Origin: Paragordius varius
Taxonomy: Eukaryota; Animalia; Nematomorpha
Direction of reading: 5' to 3'
Assembly: GCA_964247055.1 (NCBI GenBank)
Contig: OZ176055.1
Span: forward strand, 10,049,836 to 10,113,835
Length of the DNA: 64,000 bases
This document shows, piece by piece, positions 199 to 64,000 of this stretch (position 1 is the stretch's first letter; every line of letters begins with the position of its first letter). The notes below the pieces were generated by a model. That model had not been told where the DNA came from. It ran no database searches and was given only the letters and a program-made list of their open reading frames with translations. The position numbers and the translations under genes are program-made.

Positions 199-1668
199 TT
201 ATAAAGATTTATTATTGGACAAATTGGTTTTAGTTTTGTCATTAACATTTTTACATGTTACGACATTCCACCAACTTGTGATGGCGTGTAAAACGTGAGC
301 CCTATAAGCCTTGTTGAATAAAACATTCAAGTAAAAAGTTATACAAATATACACATATTCAAGCATGTAAGAGATGAGCCAAGCGCTGTGTAAATAAGCT
401 ACGGACAGCTTATCGTGTAGTATGGCGGCCACAATGTGGAAAATACCGCTAGGTAAAAGGAATAATAGGAATTGCACCATAAAAATTAGCATTGAAATGC
501 GATTCTTCTTTATGTCTGAACGACGCTTTTCCATTAACGTATTACTGACACTAAAGCCCGAAGTGTTTATGCGTGAGCCCTCTTCACCTTCTGTTTTAGA
601 GCGTTCGTTTGCATTACTAATCTCTGGTGGTGGTTTAGTTTGAAACAATTCGCTACGTTCTTGAGTTTTAGTAGAGGGTTGTACTTTAGTTTTTATCGCT
701 GTATTTATGGTTGGTAATGTGTTGTTAATGTTATTCATGTTTGCACCAGTCGAAAATATTTGATGACGGCGTCTGAGAACCATAAATTGCATAACTATAA
801 GCGTAAAAAATGGAATAAATTTGGCACAAAACTCACGGACGATTTGATAACTGATCCACATGTTAGTTTGCCGAACGGTATCAAATGTACGCGGTAATCT
901 TTCATACCTAACGTATGAATTATTATGCGTGGCTGGATTCAATCTTTTCCTTAGGCACTCTACACCAACTAGCTTATACCACAGTGTCATAGGGATGCTC
1001 CAAGCACAAGCATACACGAAACAAGCTAGTAGAGCGTATCGAGCGGTCCGTACATTACTAAACTTTTTATACTTGTAGGGCGTTATGACGGCCAAAAAGG
1101 TATCAACCGAAAATAGGAATGTTATGAGAAAACTGTACACCAAGAAAACTTTGAATATGGGCACATGGTAATGAACAATATAAATGTTCCATCGTTTGTT
1201 GTAGGCCAAATTAAGCTTGGCATCAAATGTGGTGTCAAGCAGGGGCCAAACTATCATAAGTAGCGAATTGATAAGATTTATAGTGTACAGAGCTCTCATA
1301 AGTACATAATCAGCTCTTTGGGTTAACATATGCATCGTTTTTTTCCGATTTGTATCGGATGATGTATTCTTAGAGCTGTTTTTATTCTTTGGGTCACTAA
1401 AATTTTTAGTTTTTCCTGTGAGTTGTCGATACAAAATCCGATATTTTGGCAGAAATCTACGTTTTCCCCAGCTAAGATTAACGCAAAGGCCCAAAAAATT
1501 ACCCAATAAGCCCAAAACGATGATAAAAGGTATCAGATAAAAATAGGTTAGATTCGTCAACTTTGTCCGAAATTCTAGTTCACGACAAAATGGTAAACCT
1601 GAATTTGAGTTGGAATTATTGTGAGACCAGACCAGTTTTTTAACTGTAATATATTCGCCCATATGCAA
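199..1668 (-). CDS. Intronless class A (rhodopsin-like) 7TM GPCR, FMRFamide/peptide-receptor-like, 489 aa
   Basis: Seven hydrophobic segments: TM1 ending GLLGN, TM3 ending SVDTFLAVITPYKY (DRY position = DTF, followed by the usual LAV..P..Y), TM4 AWSIP, TM5 KFIPFFTL, long ICL3, TM6 FLLFLLP, TM7 followed by FNKAYR helix 8. Subfamily is inferred from motif style only. Confidence 0.85.
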   Translation of the reverse strand: MHMGEYITVKKLVWSHNNSNSNSGLPFCRELEFRTKLTNLTYFYLIPFIIVLGLLGNFLGLCVNLSWGKRRFLPKYRILYRQLTGKTKNFSDPKNKNSSKNTSSDTNRKKTMHMLTQRADYVLMRALYTINLINSLLMIVWPLLDTTFDAKLNLAYNKRWNIYIVHYHVPIFKVFLVYSFLITFLFSVDTFLAVITPYKYKKFSNVRTARYALLACFVYACAWSIPMTLWYKLVGVECLRKRLNPATHNNSYVRYERLPRTFDTVRQTNMWISYQIVREFCAKFIPFFTLIVMQFMVLRRRHQIFSTGANMNNINNTLPTINTAIKTKVQPSTKTQERSELFQTKPPPEISNANERSKTEGEEGSRINTSGFSVSNTLMEKRRSDIKKNRISMLIFMVQFLLFLLPSGIFHIVAAILHDKLSVAYLHSAWLISYMLEYVYICITFYLNVLFNKAYRAHVLHAITSWWNVVTCKNVNDKTKTNLSNNKSL

Positions 1669-50016: not shown

Positions 50017-52788
50017 TTAAGCAAAAAACTATATTCTCTTACACATAATAACAGATTTGCATGTATAGGTTCTAATAATTGTGTCGAACTGATGATGGGT
50101 TAGCATGATTGAAACTGTATAGATAGTCCAAAAACAAGAGCTATCATAGGAAATTTCGGTATTATAAATGGCTAATTGGCGATTTAAATTACATGTCTGT
50201 TTATCTATAACACTATTTTTCACTATAATTATAAAAAATCATTAAAAACAAAAAAATTCAACATATCAATAGACATGAAAAATTACCCTTTTACCCATTT
50301 AAAACACCAAAGAATAACTCGTGAATGTAAACGATTATTACTGTTAATGAAAGTTTCACATGTCATCTGCGTTTTTTGGTTTTAAATATACTTATTATGT
50401 TAATTTAGAATATTTGTAATATCTTAGTATCGATTAATGTATTTTATTTTAATTTGTTTATTTGTTTTTTAGTATGATAGTTTGCACAAAAAAATATTTA
50501 TAGGTAATACCTTTACGTTTAATTAGATGGTCCAATGTTTTAAAATATTTTAAATAAAATAAAAGATATTTGCAAATGAGTCCAATATGACTATGGGTGA
50601 TTACCTTTTAAGGCTTCAAAAAATGTGGGGGCTAACAAAGATCCAATTACTTAACTTACCAAAATAGTCAAGGGGATTAAGGATTTATGAATAAATTGCA
50701 TTGAATGTTTTAAAAAACTATCAAAGTAATAATTTAGATCCTTAAAAAGTTCACTATAATGGTTATGAACGTTGTATTTAAGATTGGTCAGCAGATATGT
50801 AAATGGACAAGTTTTAAAATCGTATTCTATAAAATTCACTAAAAGTAAAATTAATTTTACTCAAAATATTTAGAAATTTATTTTTGCTTGAAATGTTATT
50901 TCATTTCTGTTTTATGAAAATAATCTCTGTGCTTCGCAAAAAAGACTCGCCTTGGTTACCACTGATTTACATCATGATTGGAAACTTGAAAATACACCAA
51001 GTGATATTAAATTCATTCACAATATCAATATTTACTGTAATAATTTTTAGACGGTACACGATTAGTTTAAACAACTTTGCACGATATTGACATTTGCTTA
51101 GCAAATTTTGAAAGATATTTAATTATAGTACTAACATAAATTCAAATTAATTATTTAATTATGTTATAGTAAACACCTATATAGTGTATGGGTTGTTAAA
51201 CTTGTTAAAAATATAAATACTTGCACGAGAGAAGTTTTATTTTTTCTGGCTTTAAAGAGTACACAAGCCATATAACCGTTAATAGGCTGTTTTCTAAAGA
51301 TATAATTTGTTACACATGGAATAAAAAAACGTTAAAGTTGCTTCGATCGACTATATAATTGATTAACAACTTTTTAATTACGCAAAACATATTTTAATTC
51401 CATATATGATTCATTGCTTTTTTTATATTTCGCATTTATGTATGCCTAACTTGCCCATCATTATATAATTAAATAATCAAAACATTCACACATGGAAAAG
51501 CTTAACTTTTTGATGAAATGTTACAAAATTTGAAACACATATGTATCCATCAAACTACAATCTATATTTCAGATCTTGTTATGTTAAAAGAACAGAATAG
51601 AATAAACAAAATATACCGTCCTTTCTTTTATATTATTCTGTAACGTTCATCTTACATTTGCACATAATTATAAAATTTCTTTTATGTATGCATTATTAAT
51701 TTTTTACAATATCCCTATTTTTTAATGCAATAAAATTATATCCATATTTTAGGGACATCAAAAGTTTTTTTACAGATACATGTGTTAGAATTTTTATGAT
51801 TTTTAAAAATAAATTTTAATTTACAACCATCAAACTTAAATTTATTATACCTTATGCAAAATTTTGTTATTTCGCTACCAAGATATATAAAGACATCTTA
51901 CATATAAGTAAGCAATTATCACAGCGCCTTATTTTTCGATATGGTAAAATCTTTTTTTTACTCGTTTAAAATTTATACAAGAAGGAAATTGCACTTAAAA
52001 AACATTATAAAACAATTCATAATTTGAATACGCGAATAAAAAAGAAAAATTTTATTTTTCCATATTACGATTAAAATTTTTGCTTTTTCTTTCTCATTAG
52101 CAACAATTTTTTTGTATTCCTTTTGACTTTTTACATTTCGTTACAAATTACATTTTGATTTAAAACATCTATTGAAATCTGCGATCATTCCTTTTATAGA
52201 TTTTCCAACTTTTTATTGTTTTAAATAAATTAGTTTCTTTTCAATTTTGATAATTAAATTATTAATCCAATATGTTATCATCTGTTACTATAAATTCTTA
52301 AACTCCTTACAAAAAATATTTTGATTTATAACTTTAAATCCATTTATTTTATTAGATTTTTCAATAATTATATTATCTAATTATTCTTTTTAAAAATCTG
52401 CTATATTTACATCCAAAAGACAACTATATAAAATTCAGTAGTACTATTTATTAAATTCTGTATTATAGCATAATAAAAATATGGATATTGGTATTCGAAT
52501 GATATAACATGGGGGAAAGATAATACATACTAAATGAAGATGAGCAATTAAACAAATGGATAAAATTATAATAGAAAGCATATATTTTAAATAAATTATA
52601 AAAATTGGCAAAATTACAAAATAATAGATATGCAAATCGATATATAGAGTATTTGGTATCACTCGATAGCTAAAAAAATGCTTGTTTCAACCAGAGGAGT
52701 TGCAAATCAAGAATTTTTTAAATGGGCAATAGCCAAAATTAGCGGAATAAATAAATTTATATTGAGAGGCGCAAATTTGTATGTGGTT

Positions 52789-52825
52789 ATCGCTTCTCGG
52801 CCTCTTGGCTAAGATCAAAGTGTAG
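52789..52825 (+). ncRNA. RNU2: U2 snRNA gene, 5' part (nt 1-37), interrupted
   Basis: ATCGCTTCTCGGCCTCTTGGCTAAGATCAAAGTGTAG matches the conserved U2 5' end (stem I, U6-pairing region, start of the branch-point recognition sequence). Confidence 0.96.
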
Positions 52826-55800
52826 GAGCTTCCTTTTATATTATTCCACTTCATATTTAAAAAATATAAATAATTATCCCTACTATATCCTTTCTATCCT
52901 ATCAGTTTATTCATCCCATTATCCCTTGATAATTATATCATTTTTTTGGCCTATTCTTCCAATTTATATCATATATCCGTTATCCTTATCCCATTTATAA
53001 CCGTTATCCTATTTATATCCGTTATCATATTTATATCCTCTATCCATATCCCAGTATATCCCATACGCTATTCATATCAATTATCCTTATCACATTTATA
53101 TCCATCTTTACCATGTATCCCATATCCTATTTATCTCAATTATCCCTATCCCAGTATTATCCCTTATGCTATTCATATCACTTATCCTTATTATATATCC
53201 ATCTTTACCATATATCCGTTATCCTTATCCCGCTAATAACCTTTATCTTATTTATATTGTTATTCAAATTATACCCGGTTTCCTTATCCCACTCATATTC
53301 ATAATCGCTATCCTTATTCTAATGTATCTTTTATCCTTATCCCTCTTACTTTTCGTAGATACACTATATTTATATTCCTGGCATTTACAATTTTTTTTTT
53401 TTTTTTTTTTTGATTTTCTGGCAATTAATTTTTTTTCCGGCATTTACACTATTTTTCTCGCCTTTTACCATCCATATAATATATTACATTCGTTTTATAT
53501 CCGTCCATCTTATTTTCTCTCCACTCCCTGCATTTATAACTATCTTATAACTCCAAATTTTTTTTTTAAACAAGCGAACATCCAAATATCCTGACCATTA
53601 TCATGAAACTTACAAGAGACAATGACACACTATTTATATCATTCCCATTATCACAAACATTCCACTGTCCCGAGCCTGATTGTCATTCCTCCTTTGCTGG
53701 GCATGAATGGTACCTCTCTAGAATATCTCTCCAAAGGCATATCCAAAACATACACAATATAACAATCAAACATATCATTAAATTTTGTGCAATATGTAAA
53801 CAATATATTCAAAGTAAACCCTCGCGACACCCTTGTCTTAAAAATAAAATGATATTACCAGAAACCAATCCTATAAAATGTACTCTATGTAATCAAACAT
53901 TTACAACAAAACAAGGGCTTAACAATCACACTTTTACTCACAAAAAGCATACTCTTGGATTTAAGACTTACCTCTCTAATAATAATAAATTTAATAAACC
54001 CCCAAATTGGAAGTTAACAACCATTTCTCCAAGAATCCACAGAGCCCCCAGAGTACATCGATCCCCATTATTACGACAAACTCCCCAAATAATCCCTTGG
54101 TCACCCATTATCCAAAAAGAAGAAACTCATAATCAAAAACGGCGAAAAATATCCAATAATAACAGTCCACTCCCTACCACTTCTAGAGGCTGGATTGATC
54201 TAAGCGAACCATCAGAAACGGAAAATGAATCCCCCTACACCATTAATGAATCAAACTCTATCATCACCCCAAATCAAAATACAACTACCATAAACGAACC
54301 AAATATCGATTTACTTCCTACTACATCCAAAGACTGGACTGAACCAGGTGAACATTCCGAAACTGAAATAGTTACAACCGACATGAACAATAATACACCA
54401 GATAACATTGAGCCTGTAAATACCTCTACCACATCGAAAACAAATACCGATCCATTCTCTGACGCACTCATACATATCAAACAGGACATAGAGACTTGTA
54501 ACAACTCTACTGAATTTAATGCTATATATAACAAATTAATAATTCTGATTCAAACACACTACAAAATTCAACCACTTAAAACACCATCTACCACACCTCA
54601 TAACATACAAAATAATCCATCTAAGATTCAAAGACTATATAAATTGAATCCAAAGCGAGCAACACGTCTCATTATAGACGGCGATCCTACTTATTGTCCG
54701 ATCGATAAAGATATTATTTTTCCCTACTTTCAAAATTTATTCACAGATACCTCTATACCAACCGATCTACCTCAACCACAACCTTTACCATTTCCCCCAT
54801 TTTCAATATCATATAATGAAGTGACCAAACAGCTCCTAAGGTCTAAATCAACCTCACCAGGCCCAAACGGTATTACACCTACCACCTGGCTAAAAATAGA
54901 GACACATTCACCAATCATAAAAACAATATTTGATAAAATAATTCAGCTAGGGACATTACCTGATGACTGGCTCTCTTCCAAAACAATCCTAATACACAAA
55001 TCCGGTAACATTAATGAAATAAAAAATTTTAGACCAATAACTATTTCCAACACACTATATAGAATCTTTTTTAAATATGTTAACCAAACTCTATTAAAAT
55101 CCATAATTGACAAATCTCTAATTCACCCTAATCAAAAAGGCTTTATGCCCTTTGATGGGGTATTAGAGCATAACTATGTCATTGAACAAACAATTAAGAG
55201 AGCCAAACAAGATAAGCAGAAACTTTTTATAGCCTTTCTCGATATAAATAAGGCGTTTGATTCAATTCCGCATAACCTACTTATTAATACAGTTTGTCAT
55301 CTTCCAATAAATACAACACTAAAAAAGATCATCATCCAAAATATATCCAGTTCTAAAACACAAATCTATACACAAGGCGGACTGACAGACCCGATTGCAT
55401 TTCAAAAGGGCATTAAACAGGGCTGCCCAGTCTCCGGAACTTTATTTAACCTGTCCATCAATCCACTCCTGGAGTTACTAAACACATCTTCAACATCCCT
55501 TGCATATGCCGATGATTTGGTAATCATCGCGCACCAAGCCGATGCTCTCCAAAAAACCATCCTCACTGCAGAGCATTGGCTTCAAGCACATAACATCACA
55601 ATAAATGTCAGCAAATCAGCCCTTCTTACTATTAACTCGCCAAATCCATCAATCACTATACACAATCAACTCCTCGAGCAAATCTGTGAAGGTAAATCCA
55701 TATCATACCTGGGCAAACCTATTTCGCCCTTAGCACCCCCCAAAAATACACAAGAACTGGATAATCTGGTCGACAACATAATACAATCCAATCTCGCACC

Positions 55801-57225
55801 ATGGCAGAAATTAGACTGTCTCAAAACATTCATTTTTCCCACCATCATCCATTCTCTCAGAATGGGAGCCTTGAAAAAAACCGATCTAAATAAATCTGAT
55901 AATAAAGTGCGATCCCTGATCAAAAAAATTACAGCCTTACCCGCCAGTGCCAATACCAATTATTTCTACGCACCCACAAAAGCAGGCGGTCTCGGGTTAC
56001 CCCAGCTTGGCATTCTACACGATGCATATTTGATTGACTCTACATACAAACTACTCACCTCTCCCGATGAAAAATTAGCAGACCAAGCCAAAATCCATCT
56101 TAAACATACAATATCAAAACATACCAACTCACCCTCCACAAATGATACTGACTTAAATCAATACTTCAATAATCAAATACAGATCAAAACCACTGGATGT
56201 TCATCTTTATACACCAAAGCCAGGCAAGCTTCTAAAAGGCTTGACCTGGCATGGGAATTTCAAAATTCGATACCTTTCATAAAAGGGCAATCGGTAAACA
56301 TTGACCCCAATGCCAGAAAAATTATTGTATCCTCAATATGCAAAAGAAATGCGAAAAACCACCTAAAATCCCTAATTGATTGCCCCAATCAAGGTAAAGT
56401 GATTGAAGCCATACAACAACATCCAGCCTCATCCCACTTTACCCTTTCGGGCACATATACATCTTTTAAATGCTGGCGCTTTATTCATAAGGCACGCCTT
56501 AATCTGCTCCCTGTCAATAGTCGTCCAGGATCAGCTAAAAATCCACTGTGCAGGAGATGTGGGAAGGCTAATGAAACTCTCCCCCATGTATTAAATCATT
56601 GCCTTCGATACTCTCCACACTGGATTAGGCGACACAACGCTTGTTTGGACATATTGAAAAATCATTTAACAAGCGACACCATAATACAACATGAAAACAC
56701 TTACATAACACACTTACCATTAAAACCAGACTTAATCCTAATTAACAAAGGCAACTGCTACATAGTAGATGCTGTCTGTCCCTTCGAAAACAGATATCAG
56801 TCCCTGACAGATGCTTATAACAAAAAAATTGATAAATATGAAGCTCTCATTCCTCAATTAGAATTCCAATATAAAACGGTCCAAATTCTCCCACTAGTCG
56901 TCGGAGCTTTAGGTGCATGGTACTCCAAAAATGATATCATACTTAATAAACTTTGCTCATCCATAGATGCACAGAGAATTCGCAAGCAAATGGTGAGCAC
57001 TACTATATTCTATAGTTCTGAAATATGGAGTTCCTTTATCTCAAATGACTATGTAGGTAATACACCACCCCCTTTTATCAAAAAATCTTAAAATTATATA
57101 AAGAATTTATTTTCAGTATTATAAGATACACTCAATTTGCAGTATTTTTGTGTTTGCATTCTTCTTTCTCTATAATTATATAATATAATGTGATATCACA
57201 CAAATATATATTTAAATAAATTCAA
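52826..57225 (+). mobile_element. Full-length U2-specific RLE non-LTR retrotransposon (Utopia-type, R2 superfamily), ~4.4 kb
   Basis: Lies exactly between U2 GTGTAG and TCTGTTCTTATCAG; ~780-nt 5' UTR, single ORF, ~134-nt 3' UTR with AATAAA (57215-57220); no poly(A) tail and no TSD. Confidence 0.93.
53603..57091 (+). CDS. Retrotransposon protein, 1162 aa: three N-terminal zinc fingers, reverse transcriptase, CCHC knuckle, PD-(D/E)xK restriction-like endonuclease
   Basis: ZF1 CPEPDC..HIQNIH, ZF2 CAIC..H.C, ZF3 CTLC..HTFTH; RT motifs PGPNGI, NFRPIT, QKGF, FLDINKAFDSI, GIKQGCPVSGTLF, YADD (55505-55516), YLG; CRRC..HVLNHC; RHN; KPDL..D..CPFE..KIDKY. Confidence 0.96.
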   Translation: MKLTRDNDTLFISFPLSQTFHCPEPDCHSSFAGHEWYLSRISLQRHIQNIHNITIKHIIKFCAICKQYIQSKPSRHPCLKNKMILPETNPIKCTLCNQTFTTKQGLNNHTFTHKKHTLGFKTYLSNNNKFNKPPNWKLTTISPRIHRAPRVHRSPLLRQTPQIIPWSPIIQKEETHNQKRRKISNNNSPLPTTSRGWIDLSEPSETENESPYTINESNSIITPNQNTTTINEPNIDLLPTTSKDWTEPGEHSETEIVTTDMNNNTPDNIEPVNTSTTSKTNTDPFSDALIHIKQDIETCNNSTEFNAIYNKLIILIQTHYKIQPLKTPSTTPHNIQNNPSKIQRLYKLNPKRATRLIIDGDPTYCPIDKDIIFPYFQNLFTDTSIPTDLPQPQPLPFPPFSISYNEVTKQLLRSKSTSPGPNGITPTTWLKIETHSPIIKTIFDKIIQLGTLPDDWLSSKTILIHKSGNINEIKNFRPITISNTLYRIFFKYVNQTLLKSIIDKSLIHPNQKGFMPFDGVLEHNYVIEQTIKRAKQDKQKLFIAFLDINKAFDSIPHNLLINTVCHLPINTTLKKIIIQNISSSKTQIYTQGGLTDPIAFQKGIKQGCPVSGTLFNLSINPLLELLNTSSTSLAYADDLVIIAHQADALQKTILTAEHWLQAHNITINVSKSALLTINSPNPSITIHNQLLEQICEGKSISYLGKPISPLAPPKNTQELDNLVDNIIQSNLAPWQKLDCLKTFIFPTIIHSLRMGALKKTDLNKSDNKVRSLIKKITALPASANTNYFYAPTKAGGLGLPQLGILHDAYLIDSTYKLLTSPDEKLADQAKIHLKHTISKHTNSPSTNDTDLNQYFNNQIQIKTTGCSSLYTKARQASKRLDLAWEFQNSIPFIKGQSVNIDPNARKIIVSSICKRNAKNHLKSLIDCPNQGKVIEAIQQHPASSHFTLSGTYTSFKCWRFIHKARLNLLPVNSRPGSAKNPLCRRCGKANETLPHVLNHCLRYSPHWIRRHNACLDILKNHLTSDTIIQHENTYITHLPLKPDLILINKGNCYIVDAVCPFENRYQSLTDAYNKKIDKYEALIPQLEFQYKTVQILPLVVGALGAWYSKNDIILNKLCSSIDAQRIRKQMVSTTIFYSSEIWSSFISNDYVGNTPPPFIKKS

Positions 57226-57378
57226 TCTGTTCTTATCAGCTTAATATCTGATACGACCTCTAAAGAGGTCCATGATATTAAATTTATTTTTGGAGATTTT
57301 GGGGAGGCGCTCTGGGCTTGCCTATCCCTCCCCATCGGGTCAACCTGGTATTGCAGTACCTCCAGGAGTGGCCCAAAC
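57226..57378 (+). ncRNA. RNU2: U2 snRNA gene, 3' part
   Basis: TCTGTTCTTATCAGCTTAATATCTGATA (stem IIa), GACCTC-TAAA-GAGGTC (stem IIb), Sm site ATTTTTGG, stem III GGGGAGG/CCCTCCCC, stem IV CCTGG..TATTGCAGTAC..CCAGG, ending GGCCCAAAC. Confidence 0.96.
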
Positions 57379-57509
57379 ACAATCATAAAAATCAATTTAG
57401 AAACTATTTAAAACTTTGGAAAAAGTTTATAAAATGATAAGGATTTTCTTATAAAGAACTCGAAAACTTAAGAAAAAATTATAAAATGTTTCAAGTGTAT
57501 TTCATTATC

Positions 57510-57576
57510 AGGCCACTTCTGTGTAGACGCCAGGGAAAGACCAAATCTCCAAAAATAAAAATAACATTATGGACCT
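57510..57576 (-). pseudogene. Decayed antisense fragment of the U2 3' half
   Basis: AGGCCACTTCTG matches the reverse complement of U2 CAGGAGTGGCCC, and CCAAATCTCCAAAAATAAAAATAACATTATGGACCT matches the reverse complement of U2 AGGTCCATGATATTAAATTTATTTTTGGAGATTTTGG; the middle is deleted or replaced. Confidence 0.65.
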
Positions 57577-58849
57577 GTGGAATATAACATATGTAATCAG
57601 AAATATTTAGAAATTATCACATACTTTGGCAAATATGAATATTTAAAGTACAAAAATGGTACCCAAAGTTATTCGTAGAGAAAAAAATTACTAATAATTG
57701 TTCCATATTATAAAAAATTTAATTTTAAAGCAAAAGCAAAATTAAGCGAAAATAGCGATTAAAAATGGTACTATAAAAAAACCGAAGACTACATAAAAAT
57801 AATTAACAAGGTATTAAAGAAATCCAAGAGAAAAAATAAATTAAACTGAGTATATTCAAATACAGATAATAATGATAGTCGATTTGAATAAGTGCTAAAA
57901 TAAATGCGCGATTATGAAAAATAAATGGTGGTAAAAATAGAATGGTGAATATATGTAGCGTTTGTAAAATTCAATTTAAAAATATAAAAAAGCAGACATA
58001 AAAACTAGTTATACAAGGATTAATATTATTTTGAGATTAGATATTATATATTATTATTGCGATTAAAGAATTATAATTTATGTAAATACAAGATATCACT
58101 TATCATTGTGGCTTTTCTTATGGCTTATTTTTATATCATAAATCTTATAAATATATAAACATAATTTTTGATTAACAAAGCGATACTTAGTAACTTACAT
58201 CCTATATGTAAAATTAAATGCATGATATTTTATATTTAATATGCATATAGGCATTGATTTATCAATGACATAGCAATAATATAGAAGCATTGGGCAATAA
58301 TTTATGAATACTTTGCAAATATATATTCACAATAATTTGCAAATGAATTTATAGATATGATGTTTTTATAAAATTTAGCTCGCTAATACTTTCAATACTT
58401 GCCAGTATCTATAATGATTACGGATAAAAAAGAAAAATACTGGGCATGTTTTAATTTTATCGGTTATCACAAATATATTCTGATAGATAAAAAATGTGAA
58501 AATTTACATGGCATTTTATAAGTTTCTTTGCGTTTTCAAGATTGAAAACTCAATTCAGCGGACAAAAGACAAATTTTCTGTTTTTTAAGCTATATTATTT
58601 TTTTTAAATGATGAAATTTTGTTAAAAATGAGTATAATACTGAAAATAAACTATTCAATAAGAATATATTTTATATTAATGATATAGCCGGAAAACTGAT
58701 AATTATTTTTTCTTGAATTGTTCAAGAGTTTATTTTAATTGCTCGAGAGTGAATAAGAATCGTAAATATTCTGAGAAAAATCAATTCTCATAGTTTACAG
58801 CTATATGGTAACTGCACCATATATAGACTATCATGCACATTTAATTTAA

Positions 58850-59360
58850 CATTTCGATTCAAATTGGGATGTATAACCCGAAAAAATATTGTAGTTGATA
58901 TTTTTTATAAATTAACTGGAGAAACCGTTTAAATTAATGCTTTTATCCTGATAGAAATTGTATGAATAACAAAATATTTATATTAAATTTAGTTTTGAAA
59001 AAGGGTTTTTACCAAACTACATCGACGCCATTTCTATTTTGCAACAATCATGTTTTTTGAATTGTAAGGTTAAAAGTGAGTTATTTTTTATTAAAATCAC
59101 ATTTAACATTATTATATACAGAAAAAGTGGAATATTTTGCATTATTTTTATATTATTCTTATGCACAATGTCATGCCTAAATTTGAACCTTGGGTTTTAC
59201 CTTAATAAAATATCTTTAAAAATTTTTTTATATTTTGGTTCATAAATATTATAAATTTTTGTTTTGGTGTCATTTCTTTGATATTTTTTAATATTGATTT
59301 CCTAGGTATCCAACGACCCCAATCTAAATCGAAGAACTGATCTGAATGTGTATCCAAGTG
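58850..59360 (-). mobile_element. Older, degenerate piggyBac-type MITE (family B)
   Basis: TTAA-CATTTCGATTCAAATTGGGA ... CCCCAATCTAAATCGAAG...GTATCCAAGTG-TTAA. Confidence 0.65.
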
Positions 59361-60914
59361 TTAATATATTTATCTGGGTAAATCCTATAATCCTAAAAAA
59401 ATTACTAAATCTTAAACTACATTTAAAGCAAAACAATAAACTGTTCGCCAAAAATAACAAATTTTCAAAATTTAAATTTGACGCCAAGGTGTGAATTTTA
59501 GCTTATATTTTAAAAAATCTTTCTGGCACCCTCCGTATTGTAAAATCTTTGCTAAAATGCTATATTAACACAAATTAAATTGTGTTGACACGTTTCCATC
59601 TAATGTTTTAATTTTATTTGATCTAATATGCGATAAAAATGTGATTTGATTTTGGCTAATAACAGAAAAATTAAATAACTATTTTTAGTATTTTAAAGGA
59701 TCAATCATTTCAATGTTCATTATCCTGATGCTTTTAGCTATCGAATGATATATGATACATTTATCCATATTTTTGACCCCCATTTTTGCTGCAGAGTGTC
59801 ACCTAAACGAGACGGCATATTAAAATTCACTACGTTAAAAATATATATCAATGCTTGCAGAAGCCTACATCGATAACCTATTAAGATTGGCTTAGGATGC
59901 TTTACCATAAAAATTGTTGGTTATTAATATAATAGATCCACATATGCAATTATCTAGAGATGATCAAAATATATTTTTTTGGGTAGAAATTGGAATTATA
60001 CTGATAAAACGTAAATTCAAAAGACAATTATTTAAGGACAATTATACTTTTTAAATTTAAACATCTTTTTAGTTTGCGAAATAGCAATAGATTTATATTT
60101 TGGTGTACTGTTATAGAGTATAAATATCTGCATGGCAGCATATAATAACCATTATAAAATATTATCTTATATAAATAACGGCCCTTGAGCGAAAATATCA
60201 TTCTCTCGACAGATTTTTTTAATAAGCACCACTGATCAAACTCTATAAAAACCTCCATCTGTTTCCTTTCAATGGTTAAAATATCGATTGTATATATGCA
60301 ATCACTATTGTTATCTTTACAATATAAAAACATGTTATGATTTTCGCTTTTTTAATGTTCCATGTTCAGATTAAAGTTATTAATCAATCAGGGTGAAGAA
60401 AAAATGAAAATAACAAATTTTCCCTTTAAAAACAAACCCATATTTTTAATCCGAAATCATTGGAAATCATAGATATAAATTCCAATATACATGTTGAACC
60501 ATTGGTAATACAGCAGCATGTGTTATGAAACAAACTTTGTCCATAATAATTATATAAACAATGTAATGTATATTCAAAAAACTTTTTTATCACCCCACAA
60601 TTATTGGCTAATAATATTAAAAGTGAAAAAAATAACTATAAGCCAATAATACAGCCCCCTTTGTTTTCTTTAATTTTTGGCAATAATAACTTTTTAGCAA
60701 TATATAATTTACTCATACTGTAAATGGATAAATTTTATCCATTTTACAATTCAATAAAGTCAGGCTTTATAAAAAGTATGGATGGCTTTTTAAAAAAATA
60801 TATCTATTAATTTTACGTTTTGTGCGTATTTTAAAGTGTAAAAATATATTATAAAGAAATATTAAATCAACATAGAGTAATTCATAAAAATAATTACTGT
60901 TATTTTTTTTTAAT

Positions 60915-60966
60915 TTAGGGTTAGGGTTAGGTTTAGAGAGTGCTTGGGTTAGGGTTAGGGTTAGGG
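60915..60966 (+). repeat. Proximal, partly degenerate TTAGGG tract
   Basis: TTAGGGTTAGGGTTAGGTTTAGAGAGTGCTTGGGTTAGGGTTAGGGTTAGGG. Confidence 0.9.
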
Positions 60967-62032
60967 TAATGTGACCAGATATTTTGAACTTTGACGCAGT
61001 AAATTAAAACATACTTTGCCTGTTTTTACTCCATCGGTGTGGTATATTACACAGTTTCCACAAAAAAATATCCTGATGAAATATAAATGCATATATATAT
61101 ATATATATATTCTGATGGGAAAATATCAGGATTATCGTGGTGCTTTTGGTATTAACCTTTACGAGTTATTAAAGAAAGTTATTTACACTTTTGTGGTAAA
61201 TGCTCCGCATAAAATTGCAAAAGATGCGCAATTTTTTGAAATATTTTTTTTTGGTTAAAGCTAAATGCTTTACAAAAAATATCACTAAAATATATAACTT
61301 ACATATAAAAAGTAAAAGAATATTTTTTAAAAATTTTAAATTTTTAGATGTGGTATCTGAAGGTACTAAATTTTTTGGATCTTTTAAAAAGGACTGTTCT
61401 TTCAAATAAAGGCAAAATTCCGACATTGTGCATTAATTTTAAAAATTAAGTATCATACTTCCCAGCTAATGAGTATGTAAAACTTGAAAACTCTTAAATA
61501 TACTATTTAGAAATCATACGCCATATATAATAAATTTTATATAATAGTTACAAGCATAACAATTTTCCGTTTGTTAATTATAACAAAACATGAACTTTCT
61601 AAACCTAATCAAACATTTACTAAAATATTATAAATTAATTTTGTTAGTTTTAAATTTTGAGGCACCTCTTTTTGCGGAAGCCCTAAGTGAAAGAGCCATT
61701 AGCCTGATCTTACGGTGTGGAGTCGAAGATTAATAGTTTCTCCAGTGCGGGAAAGGGTGCAATCGTAAGTTTTATGTATCATTCGAGAGAAAATAAAATA
61801 TTATCCAATTAAAAATAAGCCAATCTCAGTTTTTTACCGCAAAATGAACAATTTCTTTGATTATGGGGTTATTTTTACATAGGGTGCTATATTAAAGTTA
61901 ACTAATATATATTTATAAAAAATTATTTTTTTTAATTTTAAAAAGCAGCACAAAAGTGCACGCAGTACAAGCGCGGTTTTTTCCCGAAAACCCAGTACTG
62001 TACTGCGAAAAACAGCCTATCTGGTCACATTA
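60967..62032. mobile_element. Non-autonomous hAT-like element (1066 bp) inserted within telomeric repeats
   Basis: Perfect 15-bp TIR TAATGTGACCAGATA / TATCTGGTCACATTA; flanks GGTTAGGG and GGGAAGGG match 6/8 as a TSD; TTAGGG repeats on both sides. Confidence 0.72.
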
Positions 62033-64000
62033 GGGAAGGGTTGGTTTAGGGTTAGGGTTAGGGTTAGGGTTAGGGCTTGGTTTAGGGTTAGGGTTAGGGT
62101 TAGGGCTAGGGTTAGGGTTAGGGTTAGGGTTAGGGTTAGGGTTAGGGTTAGGGTTAGGGTTAGGGTTAGGGTTAGGGTTAGGGTTAGGGTTAGGGTTAGG
62201 GTTAGGGTTAGGGTTAGGGTTAGGGTTAGGGTTAGGGTTAGGGTTAGGGTTAGGGTTAGGGTTAGGGTTAGGGTTAGGGTTAGGGTTAGGGTTAGGGTTA
62301 GGGTTAGGGTTAGGGTTAGGGTTAGGGTTAGGGTTAGGGTTAGGGTTAGGGTTAGGGTTAGGGTTAGGGTTAGGGTTAGGGTTAGGGTTAGGGTTAGGGT
62401 TAGGGTTAGGGTTAGGGTTAGGGTTAGGGTTAGGGTTAGGGTTAGGGTTAGGGTTAGGGTTAGGGTTAGGGTTAGGGTTAGGGTTAGGGTTAGGGTTAGG
62501 GTTAGGGTTAGGGTTAGGGTTAGGGTTAGGGTTAGGGTTAGGGTTAGGGTTAGGGTTAGGGTTAGGGTTAGGGTTAGGGTTAGGGTTAGGGTTAGGGTTA
62601 GGGTTAGGGTTAGGGTTAGGGTTAGGGTTAGGGTTAGGGTTAGGGTTAGGGTTAGGGTTAGGGTTAGGGTTAGGGTTAGGGTTAGGGTTAGGGTTAGGGT
62701 TAGGGTTAGGGTTAGGGTTAGGGTTAGGGTTAGGGTTAGGGTTAGGGTTAGGGTTAGGGTTAGGGTTAGGGTTAGGGTTAGGGTTAGGGTTAGGGTTAGG
62801 GTTAGGGTTAGGGTTAGGGTTAGGGTTAGGGTTAGGGTTAGGGTTAGGGTTAGGGTTAGGGTTAGGGTTAGGGTTAGGGTTAGGGTTAGGGTTAGGGTTA
62901 GGGTTAGGGTTAGGGTTAGGGTTAGGGTTAGGGTTAGGGTTAGGGTTAGGGTTAGGGTTAGGGTTAGGGTTAGGGTTAGGGTTAGGGTTAGGGTTAGGGT
63001 TAGGGTTAGGGTTAGGGTTAGGGTTAGGGTTAGGGTTAGGGTTAGGGTTAGGGTTAGGGTTAGGGTTAGGGTTAGGGTTAGGGTTAGGGTTAGGGTTAGG
63101 GTTAGGGTTAGGGTTAGGGTTAGGGTTAGGGTTAGGGTTAGGGTTAGGGTTAGGGTTAGGGTTAGGGTTAGGGTTAGGGTTAGGGTTAGGGTTAGGGTTA
63201 GGGTTAGGGTTAGGGTTAGGGTTAGGGTTAGGGTTAGGGTTAGGGTTAGGGTTAGGGTTAGGGTTAGGGTTAGGGTTAGGGTTAGGGTTAGGGTTAGGGT
63301 TAGGGTTAGGGTTAGGGTTAGGGTTAGGGTTAGGGTTAGGGTTAGGGTTAGGGTTAGGGTTAGGGTTAGGGTTAGGGTTAGGGTTAGGGTTAGGGTTAGG
63401 GTTAGGGTTAGGGTTAGGGTTAGGGTTAGGGTTAGGGTTAGGGTTAGGGTTAGGGTTAGGGTTAGGGTTAGGGTTAGGGTTAGGGTTAGGGTTAGGGTTA
63501 GGGTTAGGGTTAGGGTTAGGGTTAGGGTTAGGGTTAGGGTTAGGGTTAGGGTTAGGGTTAGGGTTAGGGTTAGGGTTAGGGTTAGGGTTAGGGTTAGGGT
63601 TAGGGTTAGGGTTAGGGTTAGGGTTAGGGTTAGGGTTAGGGTTAGGGTTAGGGTTAGGGTTAGGGTTAGGGTTAGGGTTAGGGTTAGGGTTAGGGTTAGG
63701 GTTAGGGTTAGGGTTAGGGTTAGGGTTAGGGTTAGGGTTAGGGTTAGGGTTAGGGTTAGGGTTAGGGTTAGGGTTAGGGTTAGGGTTAGGGTTAGGGTTA
63801 GGGTTAGGGTTAGGGTTAGGGTTAGGGTTAGGGTTAGGGTTAGGGTTAGGGTTAGGGTTAGGGTTAGGGTTAGGGTTAGGGTTAGGGTTAGGGTTAGGGT
63901 TAGGGTTAGGGTTAGGGTTAGGGTTAGGGTTAGGGTTAGGGTTAGGGTTAGGGTTAGGGTTAGGGTTAGGGTTAGGGTTAGGGTTAGGGTTAGGGTTAGG
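62033..64000 (+). repeat. Telomere (TTAGGG)n, right chromosome end
   Basis: Variant repeats (GGGAAGGG, CTTGGTTTAGGG, CTAGGG) up to ~62110, then pure TTAGGG to the window end. Confidence 0.99.

What the first reader, a model, noticed from the sequence alone, without database searches (positions are those of the whole stretch)
52789..57378. Intact site-specific retrotransposon inserted into the branch-point recognition sequence of a U2 snRNA gene
Seen: U2 nt 1-37 (ending GTGTAG), then 4.4 kb encoding an uninterrupted 1162-aa ZF3-RT-CCHC-RLE protein in the same orientation, then the rest of U2 starting TCTGTTCTTATCAG with all stems and the Sm site intact. Established: RLE-clade non-LTR elements (R2, NeSL, Utopia) use target-primed reverse transcription at fixed sites in multicopy RNA genes, and Utopia is the U2-targeting family. 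Inference: this is a full-length, probably young or active Utopia-type element, possibly from a lineage where none has been described. Its target is almost identical to U2 of other animals, so it is a candidate natural sequence-specific gene-insertion enzyme.
Basis: partly seen in the sequence, partly recalled or inferred. Interest (0 to 1): 0.88.

Follow-up and report, generated by a model that had tools for sequence, protein, structure and literature searches.

The report
Utopia retrotransposon splitting a U2 gene
A complete jumping gene of the known 'Utopia' kind sits at the standard Utopia site inside a U2 splicing-RNA gene near a chromosome end of what is probably a horsehair worm; it is a new host and a new family, not a new mechanism.

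Summary
A U2 snRNA gene (52789-57381) is split after nt 37 by a 4400-bp insert (52826-57225) in the same orientation. The insert carries one uninterrupted 1162-aa ORF with three N-terminal zinc fingers, RT (YADD), a CCHC finger and a PD-D-K restriction-like endonuclease.

It is a Utopia-type (NeSL-clade) non-LTR retrotransposon:
- The 3' junction lies directly before TCTGTTCTTATCAG, the published Utopia site.
- All 25 truncated U2 pieces examined in this genome start at that site, and only 5 U2 genes are uninterrupted.
- At least four protein families 32-46% identical to each other occupy U2 genes here.
- The closest outside relatives (spider, springtail, tick, turtle) are also flanked by U2.

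"Young or active" is only partly supported. The ORF is intact and shows past purifying selection (dN/dS 0.29 against its one 97% copy). That other copy is frame-broken, and no RNA evidence was obtained.

The host is probably a hairworm (Nematomorpha), which is not on the published Utopia host list.

Extras: the locus lies 4.7 kb from the telomere in a subtelomeric block shared by five chromosome ends. A sister family in this genome targets U1 snRNA genes.

The scan's first readers had already flagged Utopia-in-U2 copies and the U1 family on other pieces of this genome.

The parts
52690..52788 (+). U2 upstream (promoter-like) region, conserved with the uninterrupted U2 genes
   Evidence: Alignment of the upstream 110 nt of 12 canonical-type U2 loci. 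The blocks AAATAAATTTATATTGA and AAATTTGTATGTGGTT are shared with the intact genes at C1 and C3.
52789..52825 (+). U2 snRNA 5' fragment, nt 1-37, ending GTGTAG
   Evidence: RF00004, 42.3 bits. Identical to nt 1-37 of the intact U2.
52826..57225 (+). Utopia-type non-LTR retrotransposon, family 'A', full length, 4400 bp (the final A could equally be U2 A39)
   Evidence: A second copy with the same two junctions lies at C3:359372-363703.
52826..53602 (+). 5' UTR, including 101-bp tandem repeats (52973-53217) and a spurious 142-aa ORF
   Evidence: 95% identical to copy A2 with many indels. No ribozyme found by Rfam and no significant fold.
53603..57091 (+). Single ORF of 1162 aa (stop codon included)
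53666..53941 (+). Three N-terminal zinc fingers (residues 22-51, 62-78, 93-113); presumed target-DNA binding
   Evidence: (zf-C2H2_4). The same three-finger layout occurs in families B, C, the U1 family and the springtail and tick relatives.
54992..55714 (+). Reverse transcriptase domain (residues 464-704, YADD at 641-644)
   Evidence: Pfam RVT_1 E 3e-33. Aligns to R2 RT structures.
56549..56602 (+). CCHC zinc finger (CRRCGKANETLPHVLNHC, residues 983-1000)
   Evidence: Aligned with the R2 CCHC.
56723..56839 (+). Restriction-like endonuclease core (K1041-P-D ... D1056 ... K1074/K1078)
57092..57225 (+). 3' UTR, with AATAAATT at 57215-57222 just before the junction
   Evidence: An AATAAA(TT)-type motif lies within about 12 nt of the junction in every family here and in 4 of 5 outside relatives.
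57226..57381 (+). U2 snRNA 3' fragment (nt 40-195 of this species' U2; stems and Sm site intact)
   Evidence: RF00004 118.3 bits. 100% identical to the intact U2.
57382..57404 (+). Conserved downstream box (ATCATAAAAATCAATTTAGAAAC), a candidate snRNA 3' box
   Evidence: Conserved in intact and inserted U2 loci. The function is inferred.
62037..64000 (+). Telomere repeat array at the contig end, 4.7 kb beyond the U2 3' end
   Evidence: The window is the last 64 kb of contig C6.

Best explanation
This is a full-length member of a new family of Utopia, the U2-snRNA-gene-specific lineage of restriction-like-endonuclease (RLE) non-LTR retrotransposons in the NeSL clade.

Shown:
- It sits in a U2 gene, in the U2 orientation.
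- Its 3' end abuts U2 at the canonical Utopia site.
- Two target bases (TA) are lost at the 5' junction and there is no target-site duplication.
- It has one intact ORF with ZF x3, RT, CCHC and RLE.
- The same junctions recur in an independent copy with different flanks.
- Several divergent sister families use the same site.

Inferred from the homology to R2:
- The N-terminal zinc fingers bind the conserved U2 sequence.
- The RLE nicks the bottom strand opposite U2 nt 38/39.
- The RT primes on that 3'-OH and copies the element RNA from its 3' end (target-primed reverse transcription).
- A second cut 2-4 bp upstream on the top strand gives the small deletion.

Transcription is most likely read-through from the retained U2 promoter, which is conserved upstream of the inserted copy. 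That would give a capped Pol II transcript with a 37-nt U2 leader. The AATAAATT motif at the 3' end is either a processing signal or part of what the RT recognises.

The copy is coding-competent. Whether it still moves is open.
For: Site:
- The 3' junction is |TCTGTTCTTATCAG here and in all 25 truncated U2 pieces of the genome.
- This is the site published for Utopia (U2 resumes at nt 39).

Independent insertions:
- A1 lies in subtelomere-type flanks and A2 in C3-array-type flanks. They share both junctions.
- Families B and C show the same pattern.

Protein:
-.

Relatives:
- The best outside hits are 32-36% identical.
- 5 of 6 relatives examined are flanked by U2 pieces on both sides and on the same strand. 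All have the same 3' junction.

Tree:
- The window's protein falls in a 100/100 clade with those U2-flanked arthropod elements.
- A 98/97 split separates it from Ulp1-bearing NeSL-like proteins.

Selection:
- A1-A2 dN/dS is 0.29 (21 synonymous against 22 non-synonymous changes, where sites would predict about 1:3.5).
- The ORF is 98.7% identical against 95-96% in the UTRs.

Independent samples:
- Contigs of 4 public runs under 3 organism labels hold the element. One starts 14 nt inside the U2 5' part and runs 2 kb into the element.
Against: - No Repbase Utopia, NeSL or R2 reference proteins were available. The tree is unrooted, and Utopia identity of the reference rows rests on their U2 flanks.
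- This genome's proteins have a deviant amino-acid make-up (tree warnings).
- Only Logan contigs could be laid. None bridges a junction by 31 letters or more (15 nt and 9 nt at best).
- No RNA run held the element.
- Family A has only this one intact copy.
- No ribozyme or significant UTR structure was found, so the transcription and processing route is inference only.
Confidence: 0.9

Rival explanations
1. It is an intact-looking but no longer mobile relic. Family A has stopped moving and this copy merely has not yet decayed.
For: - There is only one other near-full copy, 97% identical, with its frame shifted near residue 993.
- All other family-A matches are 5'-truncated, 69-88% identical and full of stops.
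- No RNA run held the element.
- Families B and C each have two to four intact copies.
Against: - All 1162 codons are open in an AT-rich genome where stops arise easily.
- All catalytic motifs are present.
- dN/dS of 0.29 shows that the lineages leading to A1 and A2 were under selection until after they split.
- The U2 halves around it are still 100% identical to the functional gene, while the subtelomeric flanks differ by 12-28% between chromosome ends.
Confidence: 0.4
2. The U2-linked copies arose by segmental duplication or gene conversion of U2-bearing blocks (subtelomeres, the C3 array), not by site-specific insertion.
For: - Five chromosome ends share 72-88% identical blocks on both sides of U2.
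- The C3 array holds repeated inverted pairs of truncated family-A copies.
Against: - Each homologous subtelomeric U2 holds a different family (A, B, C, a truncated D), and one is empty (C1 right end).
- A1/A2 and B1/B2 sit in non-homologous flank types.
- Proteins only 32-46% identical share the same junction base.
- Outside relatives in four other animal groups use the same site.
Confidence: 0.04
3. It is a different RLE clade (R2, or NeSL in the strict sense) that converged on the U2 site, as the APE-type element Keno did.
For: - R2 structures are the only solved homologues.
- Automatic database names call the relatives 'R2'.
- No curated Utopia references could be included.
Against: - Similarity to U2-flanked relatives is 500-640 bits, against 197 bits to R2.
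- No Ulp1 protease and no APE domain were found.
- It is nested with U2-flanked elements at 100/100 support.
Confidence: 0.04
4. It is an assembly artefact that joins a U2 gene and a retrotransposon.
For: No read or contig bridges either junction by 31 letters or more.
Against: - The same two junctions occur in a second copy on another contig.
- Contigs from independent samples run from inside the U2 5' part into the element, and from the element to the 3' junction.
- 25 of 25 truncated U2 pieces start at the same base.
Confidence: 0.02

Closest known systems
Utopia (Kojima & Jurka 2015, PMC4640811): U2 snRNA gene-specific RLE non-LTR retrotransposons of the NeSL clade
   Same: - Same target gene, same 3' junction (U2 resumes at TCTGTTC) and same orientation.
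- A single ORF with 1-3 N-terminal zinc fingers, RT, CCHC and RLE.
- No TSD, as in the arthropod families.
- Several families coexist in U2 genes.
- Disrupted U2 genes outnumber intact ones, as in Phytophthora and Nasonia.
   Different: - New families, at most 36% identical to any outside protein found.
- The host is probably Nematomorpha, which is not in the published host table.
- Many target genes sit in a shared subtelomeric block.
- A sister family here has switched to U1.
R2 (28S rDNA-specific RLE element; solved structures 9nl2, 9dou, 8gh6)
   Same: - The RT, linker, CCHC and RLE architecture aligns (E 2.8e-57).
- The presumed TPRT mechanism is the same.
- Both insert in the orientation of a multicopy RNA gene and are presumably co-transcribed with it.
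   Different: - The target is U2, not 28S.
- No Myb domain was detected by Pfam.
- No HDV-like ribozyme was detected.
- The host gene is Pol II-transcribed rather than Pol I.
NeSL-1 (nematode spliced-leader gene-specific element)
   Same: Same broad clade, and it also targets a small RNA gene.
   Different: - No Ulp1-like protease domain.
- A different target.
- Ulp1-bearing relatives fall on the other side of a 98/97 split in the tree.
Keno (Tx1 group, U2-specific)
   Same: The same U2 insertion site, according to Kojima & Jurka 2015.
   Different: Keno has an APE endonuclease. This element has a C-terminal RLE and no APE domain.

Membership tests
Utopia | Inserted in a U2 snRNA gene with the U2 sequence resuming at TCTGTTC (canonical nt 39) at the 3' junction | tested here: met
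   The published site is given.
Utopia | Target specificity of the family, not just of one copy | tested here: met
   The second family-A copy has different flanks and the same junctions. 25 of 25 truncated U2 pieces start at the site.
Utopia | One ORF with N-terminal zinc finger(s), RT, and a C-terminal zinc finger plus PD-(D/E)xK endonuclease | tested here: met
Utopia | RT groups with other Utopia families within the NeSL clade | tested here: met
   A 100/100 clade with spider, springtail, tick and crayfish-type elements that I verified as U2-flanked. Caveats: the tree is unrooted, no Repbase references were available, and there is a composition-bias warning.
Utopia (arthropod type) | No target-site duplication | tested here: met
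   The 5' part ends GTGTAG and the 3' part starts TCTG. The TA of the intact gene is missing.
NeSL sensu stricto | Ulp1-like cysteine protease domain and a spliced-leader gene target | tested here: not met
   No PF02902 in the ORF. The target is U2.
R2 | Insertion at the 28S rDNA R2 site; a Myb domain N-terminal to the RT | tested here: not met
   The target is U2. Pfam finds no Myb. The Myb test was by Pfam only.
Keno | Apurinic/apyrimidinic-like endonuclease N-terminal to the RT | tested here: not met
   No Exo_endo_phos match. An RLE is present instead.

The most novel reading that the evidence does not exclude
This genome may be a natural experiment in retargeting. At least four Utopia families compete for a U2 gene set of which only two canonical copies remain uninterrupted. 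The U2 genes in a shared subtelomeric block on five or more chromosome ends act as landing pads. A recently active sister of U2-specific family C (43% identical, 100/100 support) has switched to a fixed site in U1 snRNA genes. I found no non-LTR retrotransposon with that target in the literature searched. If so, the family C / U1-family pair, with family A as an outlier using the same U2 site, would let the zinc-finger code for RLE target choice be read from natural proteins.
Probability: 0.5. Interest if true: 0.7.

Novelty: new member of a known kind. Interest (0 to 1): 0.5.

Why it matters
Utopia is one of the few retrotransposon lineages that has kept one target site across eukaryotic supergroups.

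This locus adds a probable new host phylum and a complete, coding-competent family. It does not change the picture of how such elements work.

The wider context in this genome is more useful:
- Four or more divergent proteins recognise the same 28-nt, nearly universal U2 sequence.
- A sister family recognises U1.
- The host tolerates loss of most U2 copies.

These give comparative material for how RLE elements choose targets. That question is being pursued for R2-based gene insertion, where NeSL/Utopia elements are already in candidate inventories (PMC13580325).

Tried and rejected
- Rfam at E<=5 over 52600-57500 found no HDV-like or other ribozyme and no other RNA family beyond the two U2 pieces.
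- Thermodynamic folds of the 3' UTR, the first 150 nt of the 5' UTR and family C's 3' UTR do not differ from shuffles (z -0.8, +0.7, -1.5).
- The 142-aa upstream ORF is spurious. It is low-complexity, 60% identical with frame-breaking indels in copy A2, and absent from the other families.
- The mixture-model tree on 59 rows did not finish, so LG+G4 was used.
- Identifying the host from HSP70, tubulin and mitochondrial COX1 failed. The genes are split by introns or TGA codons, and the tools take no read-through. A single-exon GPCR gave the one hairworm hit.
- The Gordionus RT fragment P0100 groups with this genome's families in the trees, but by BLAST it is closest to arthropod elements. I do not use it to identify the host.
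- The Daphnia relative P0106 has no U2 flank.
- The look-up of encoding contigs had no record for P0100.
- Read laying gave contigs only, so there is no bridging of 31 letters or more and no RNA. The 'skips 4399' joint in run X5 is just an uninterrupted U2 gene with short sides and says nothing about this locus.
I sent no telomere letters to any search tool.
Full report
**1. The observation**

The sequence is as described. U2 nt 1-37 occupy 52789-52825 and end ...GATCAAAGTGTAG. A 4400-bp insert follows (52826-57225). U2 then resumes at 57226 with TCTGTTCTTATCAG and runs to 57381.

Rfam's U2 model scores the 3' piece at 118.3 bits and the 5' piece at 42.3 bits. The genome's uninterrupted U2 is 195 nt, with two identical copies at C1:15223126 and C3:526786. 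It reads ...GTGTAGTA|TCTGTTC.... The split copy therefore lacks only TA, or only T, because the element's last A could be U2's. Its 156-nt 3' part is 100% identical to the functional gene.

The insert has one ORF, 53603-57091, open for 1162 codons. A 142-aa ORF in the 5' UTR is spurious.

**2. What the protein is**

- Pfam finds RVT_1 at residues 464-704 (E 3e-33) and a C2H2 finger.
- By eye and regular expression there are three N-terminal fingers (residues 22-51, 62-78, 93-113), YADD, a CCHC finger (983-1000) and KPD...D...K (1041-1078).
- phmmer against PDB sequences aligns RT, linker, CCHC and endonuclease to solved R2 proteins (9nl2, E 2.8e-57).
- There is no APE, Ulp1 or RNase H domain.

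**3. Site specificity inside this genome**

Rfam on the whole 110.6-Mb assembly gives 46 U2 matches. Among the 30 best:
- 5 are uninterrupted: two canonical, two variants on C2, and one on C4 with an altered site.
- 25 are truncated, and every one of those begins at U2 nt 38-40, preceded by an AT-rich element end.
- An exact-pattern search finds only 4 uninterrupted copies of the site, against 24 copies of the 3' part.

A protein search of the genome with BLAST and trees shows at least four U2-resident families:

| Family | Copies and state | Identity to A |
|---|---|---|
| A | This copy, plus C3:359372-363703 (97% DNA identity, frame shifted near residue 993), plus degraded truncated copies in a C3 array | - |
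| B | 1410-1411 aa, two intact copies | 42% |
| D | 972-aa open frame | 40% |
| C | 1278-1293 aa, four intact copies | 32% |

Two further 3'-end types occur on C2.

The 5' junctions are constant within a family: GTGTAG| in A and B, and GTGT| in four of the five C copies (the C6-left copy reads GATCAAAA|). They give 2-4-bp deletions and no duplication.

A1 and A2, and likewise B1 and B2, lie in non-homologous flank types. They are therefore separate insertions at the same base, not duplicated segments.

**4. Relatives elsewhere**

The best outside proteins are only 32-36% identical. They come from spiders, ticks, a springtail, crayfish, turtles, Plectus and a Gordionus fragment.

I fetched the contigs of six of them. 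Five carry a U2 5' piece upstream and a U2 3' piece downstream on the same strand: Orchesella, Trichonephila, Ornithodoros, Lepidochelys and an ENA contig. Their 3' junction is again |TCTGTTCTTATCAG. The turtle and ENA copies show the roughly 20-bp duplication that Kojima & Jurka describe for reptiles. The arthropod copies show none.

In an IQ-TREE analysis (26 rows, 807 columns, LG+G4, UFBoot/SH-aLRT):
- Family A groups with B+D (100/100).
- C groups with a U1-associated family (100/100).
- All of this genome's families plus the Gordionus fragment group at 94/99.
- That group sits in a 100/100 clade with the U2-flanked arthropod elements.
- Ulp1-bearing NeSL-like proteins lie across a 98/97 split.

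The tree is unrooted, lacks curated references, and carries a composition warning for this genome's rows.

**5. Comparison with the literature**

Kojima & Jurka 2015 (PMC4640811) define Utopia by exactly these features:
- U2 resumes at nt 39.
- The protein is ZF-RT-ZF-RLE.
- Several families coexist in U2.
- Disrupted genes outnumber intact ones (for example 41 to 7 in P. infestans).
- Arthropod families make no TSD.

All features I could test are met. Their host table lists arthropods, nematodes, chordates, echinoderms, oomycetes and Acanthamoeba, but not Nematomorpha.

A 2026 review notes that NeSL/Utopia elements are already in inventories of candidate insertion enzymes, and it reports sponge Utopias.

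**6. Host**

A single-exon GPCR ORF in the window has exactly one hit below 1e-5 among 5.8 billion proteins. That hit is a Gordionus sp. (hairworm) protein, 28% identical, E 6e-34. This agrees with earlier notes of the scan. The host is probably a nematomorph, though not close to Gordionus. Run and organism names were coded, so I cannot name it.

**7. Is it young or active?**

For:
- The ORF is intact and the motifs are complete.
- A1-A2 dN/dS is 0.29, and the ORF is 98.7% identical against 95-96% in the UTRs.
- The U2 halves are identical to the functional gene, although the subtelomeric flanks differ by 12-28% between ends.

Against:
- This is the only intact copy of its family.
- It is 3% diverged from its nearest copy.
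- No RNA run held the element.

The element is present in contigs of four runs under three organism labels. One contig covers 52812-54852 and another 56620-57225. No piece bridges a junction by 31 letters or more. I rate current activity as open, at about 50-60%.

**8. Mechanism**

Shown:
- The site, the orientation and the junction structure.
- The domain set.
- A retained U2 upstream region and downstream box, identical in layout to the intact genes.
- An AATAAA(TT)-type motif within about 12 nt of the 3' junction in every family here, in the U1 family, and in 4 of 5 outside relatives.

Inferred:
- Zinc-finger recognition of the U2 sequence.
- A bottom-strand nick opposite nt 38/39, followed by TPRT.
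- A top-strand cut 2-4 bp upstream.
- Expression by read-through from the U2 Pol II promoter.

No ribozyme or significant UTR structure was found.

One off-target copy of the U1 family carries 9 nt of U1 after the element end. This suggests that template RNAs extend a few bases into the downstream target gene.

**9. Context worth recording**

Subtelomeric position:
- The window is the right end of contig C6. The telomere array starts at 62037, 4.7 kb beyond U2.
- C6-left, C8-left, C4-left and C1-right have the same layout: a U2 gene pointing at the telomere, 3.5-6.4 kb away. The blocks on both sides of U2 are 72-88% identical for the four ends compared by BLAST. For C1-right the homology rests on the flank alignment.
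- Their U2 genes hold family C, family B, a roughly 870-bp truncated insert, and nothing, respectively.

A U1-targeting sister family:
- The sister of family C (43% identical) is inserted in U1 snRNA genes.
- A full-length 4.1-kb copy at C6:3725124-3729224 has a 1289-aa ORF. Its flanks are ATACTTACCTGGCGCGG| and |CAATCGTGATCATGAAGG.
- At least seven further U1 genes are truncated at the same position, against four intact ones.
- Two 99.7% identical 5'-truncated copies lie outside U1 on other contigs, a sign of recent activity.
- I found only DNA transposons (Dada) reported for U1.
- First readers of the scan had flagged this family on other windows.

**10. Verdict**

The element is a new family and a probable new host phylum of a well-described kind. 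Its activity is unproven. The interest lies mainly in the genome-wide context rather than in this copy.

Noticed in passing
G000:C6:3725124-3729390 (L068+L043); also C6:565000-634000 (L055-L067): A family sister to U2-specific family C (43% identical, 100/100 support) is inserted at one fixed position (about nt 20) of U1 snRNA genes. There is one full-length copy with a 1289-aa ORF and U1 pieces on both sides. At least 7 further U1 genes are truncated at the same point, against 4 intact. No non-LTR element with this target was found in the papers searched.
   Followed up: partly
G000:C8:180105-182609 (L042) and G000:C4:7793983-7796394 (L044): Two 5'-truncated copies of the U1 family, 99.7% identical to the full-length copy, lie outside U1 genes. 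One carries 9 nt of U1 after the element end. This points to recent activity with off-target insertion, and to template RNA that extends into the downstream target.
   Followed up: partly
window 57382-62036 and 51500-52788; L076, L037+L048, L032+L047, L039: Five chromosome ends (C6 right and left, C8 left, C4 left, C1 right) share a subtelomeric block with a U2 gene pointing at the telomere, 3.5-6.4 kb away. Four of these U2 genes are occupied by different Utopia families. The C1 copy is one of only two canonical intact U2 genes.
   Followed up: partly
whole genome: Only two identical canonical U2 genes are uninterrupted. Two variant copies on C2 are 84% identical to them. One on C4 (L005) has the site changed to GTAGAACTCG, which would alter both the branch-point pairing sequence and the Utopia target.
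   Followed up: no
G000:C3:257000-530000: A large U2 gene array holds degraded Utopia copies. These include five head-to-head inverted pairs of 5'-truncated family-A copies (for example 311822-313919 minus strand with 313920-315071 plus strand), so the pair itself has been duplicated as part of a larger repeat.
   Followed up: no
window 57215-57222 and the 3' ends of all families: An AATAAA(TT)-type motif lies 3-6 nt before the 3' junction in families whose proteins are only 32-46% identical. The same holds for the U1 family and most outside Utopias. It may be a poly(A)-type signal or an RT recognition element.
   Followed up: partly
window 199-1668 (- strand): A single-exon rhodopsin-family GPCR ORF (489 aa) has one detectable homologue in 5.8 billion proteins, a Gordionus hairworm protein at 28% identity.
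   Followed up: partly
L054 (ENA metagenome contig): An outside Utopia copy in a U2 gene lies next to an intact U1 gene on the opposite strand, so it is an snRNA gene cluster.
   Followed up: no
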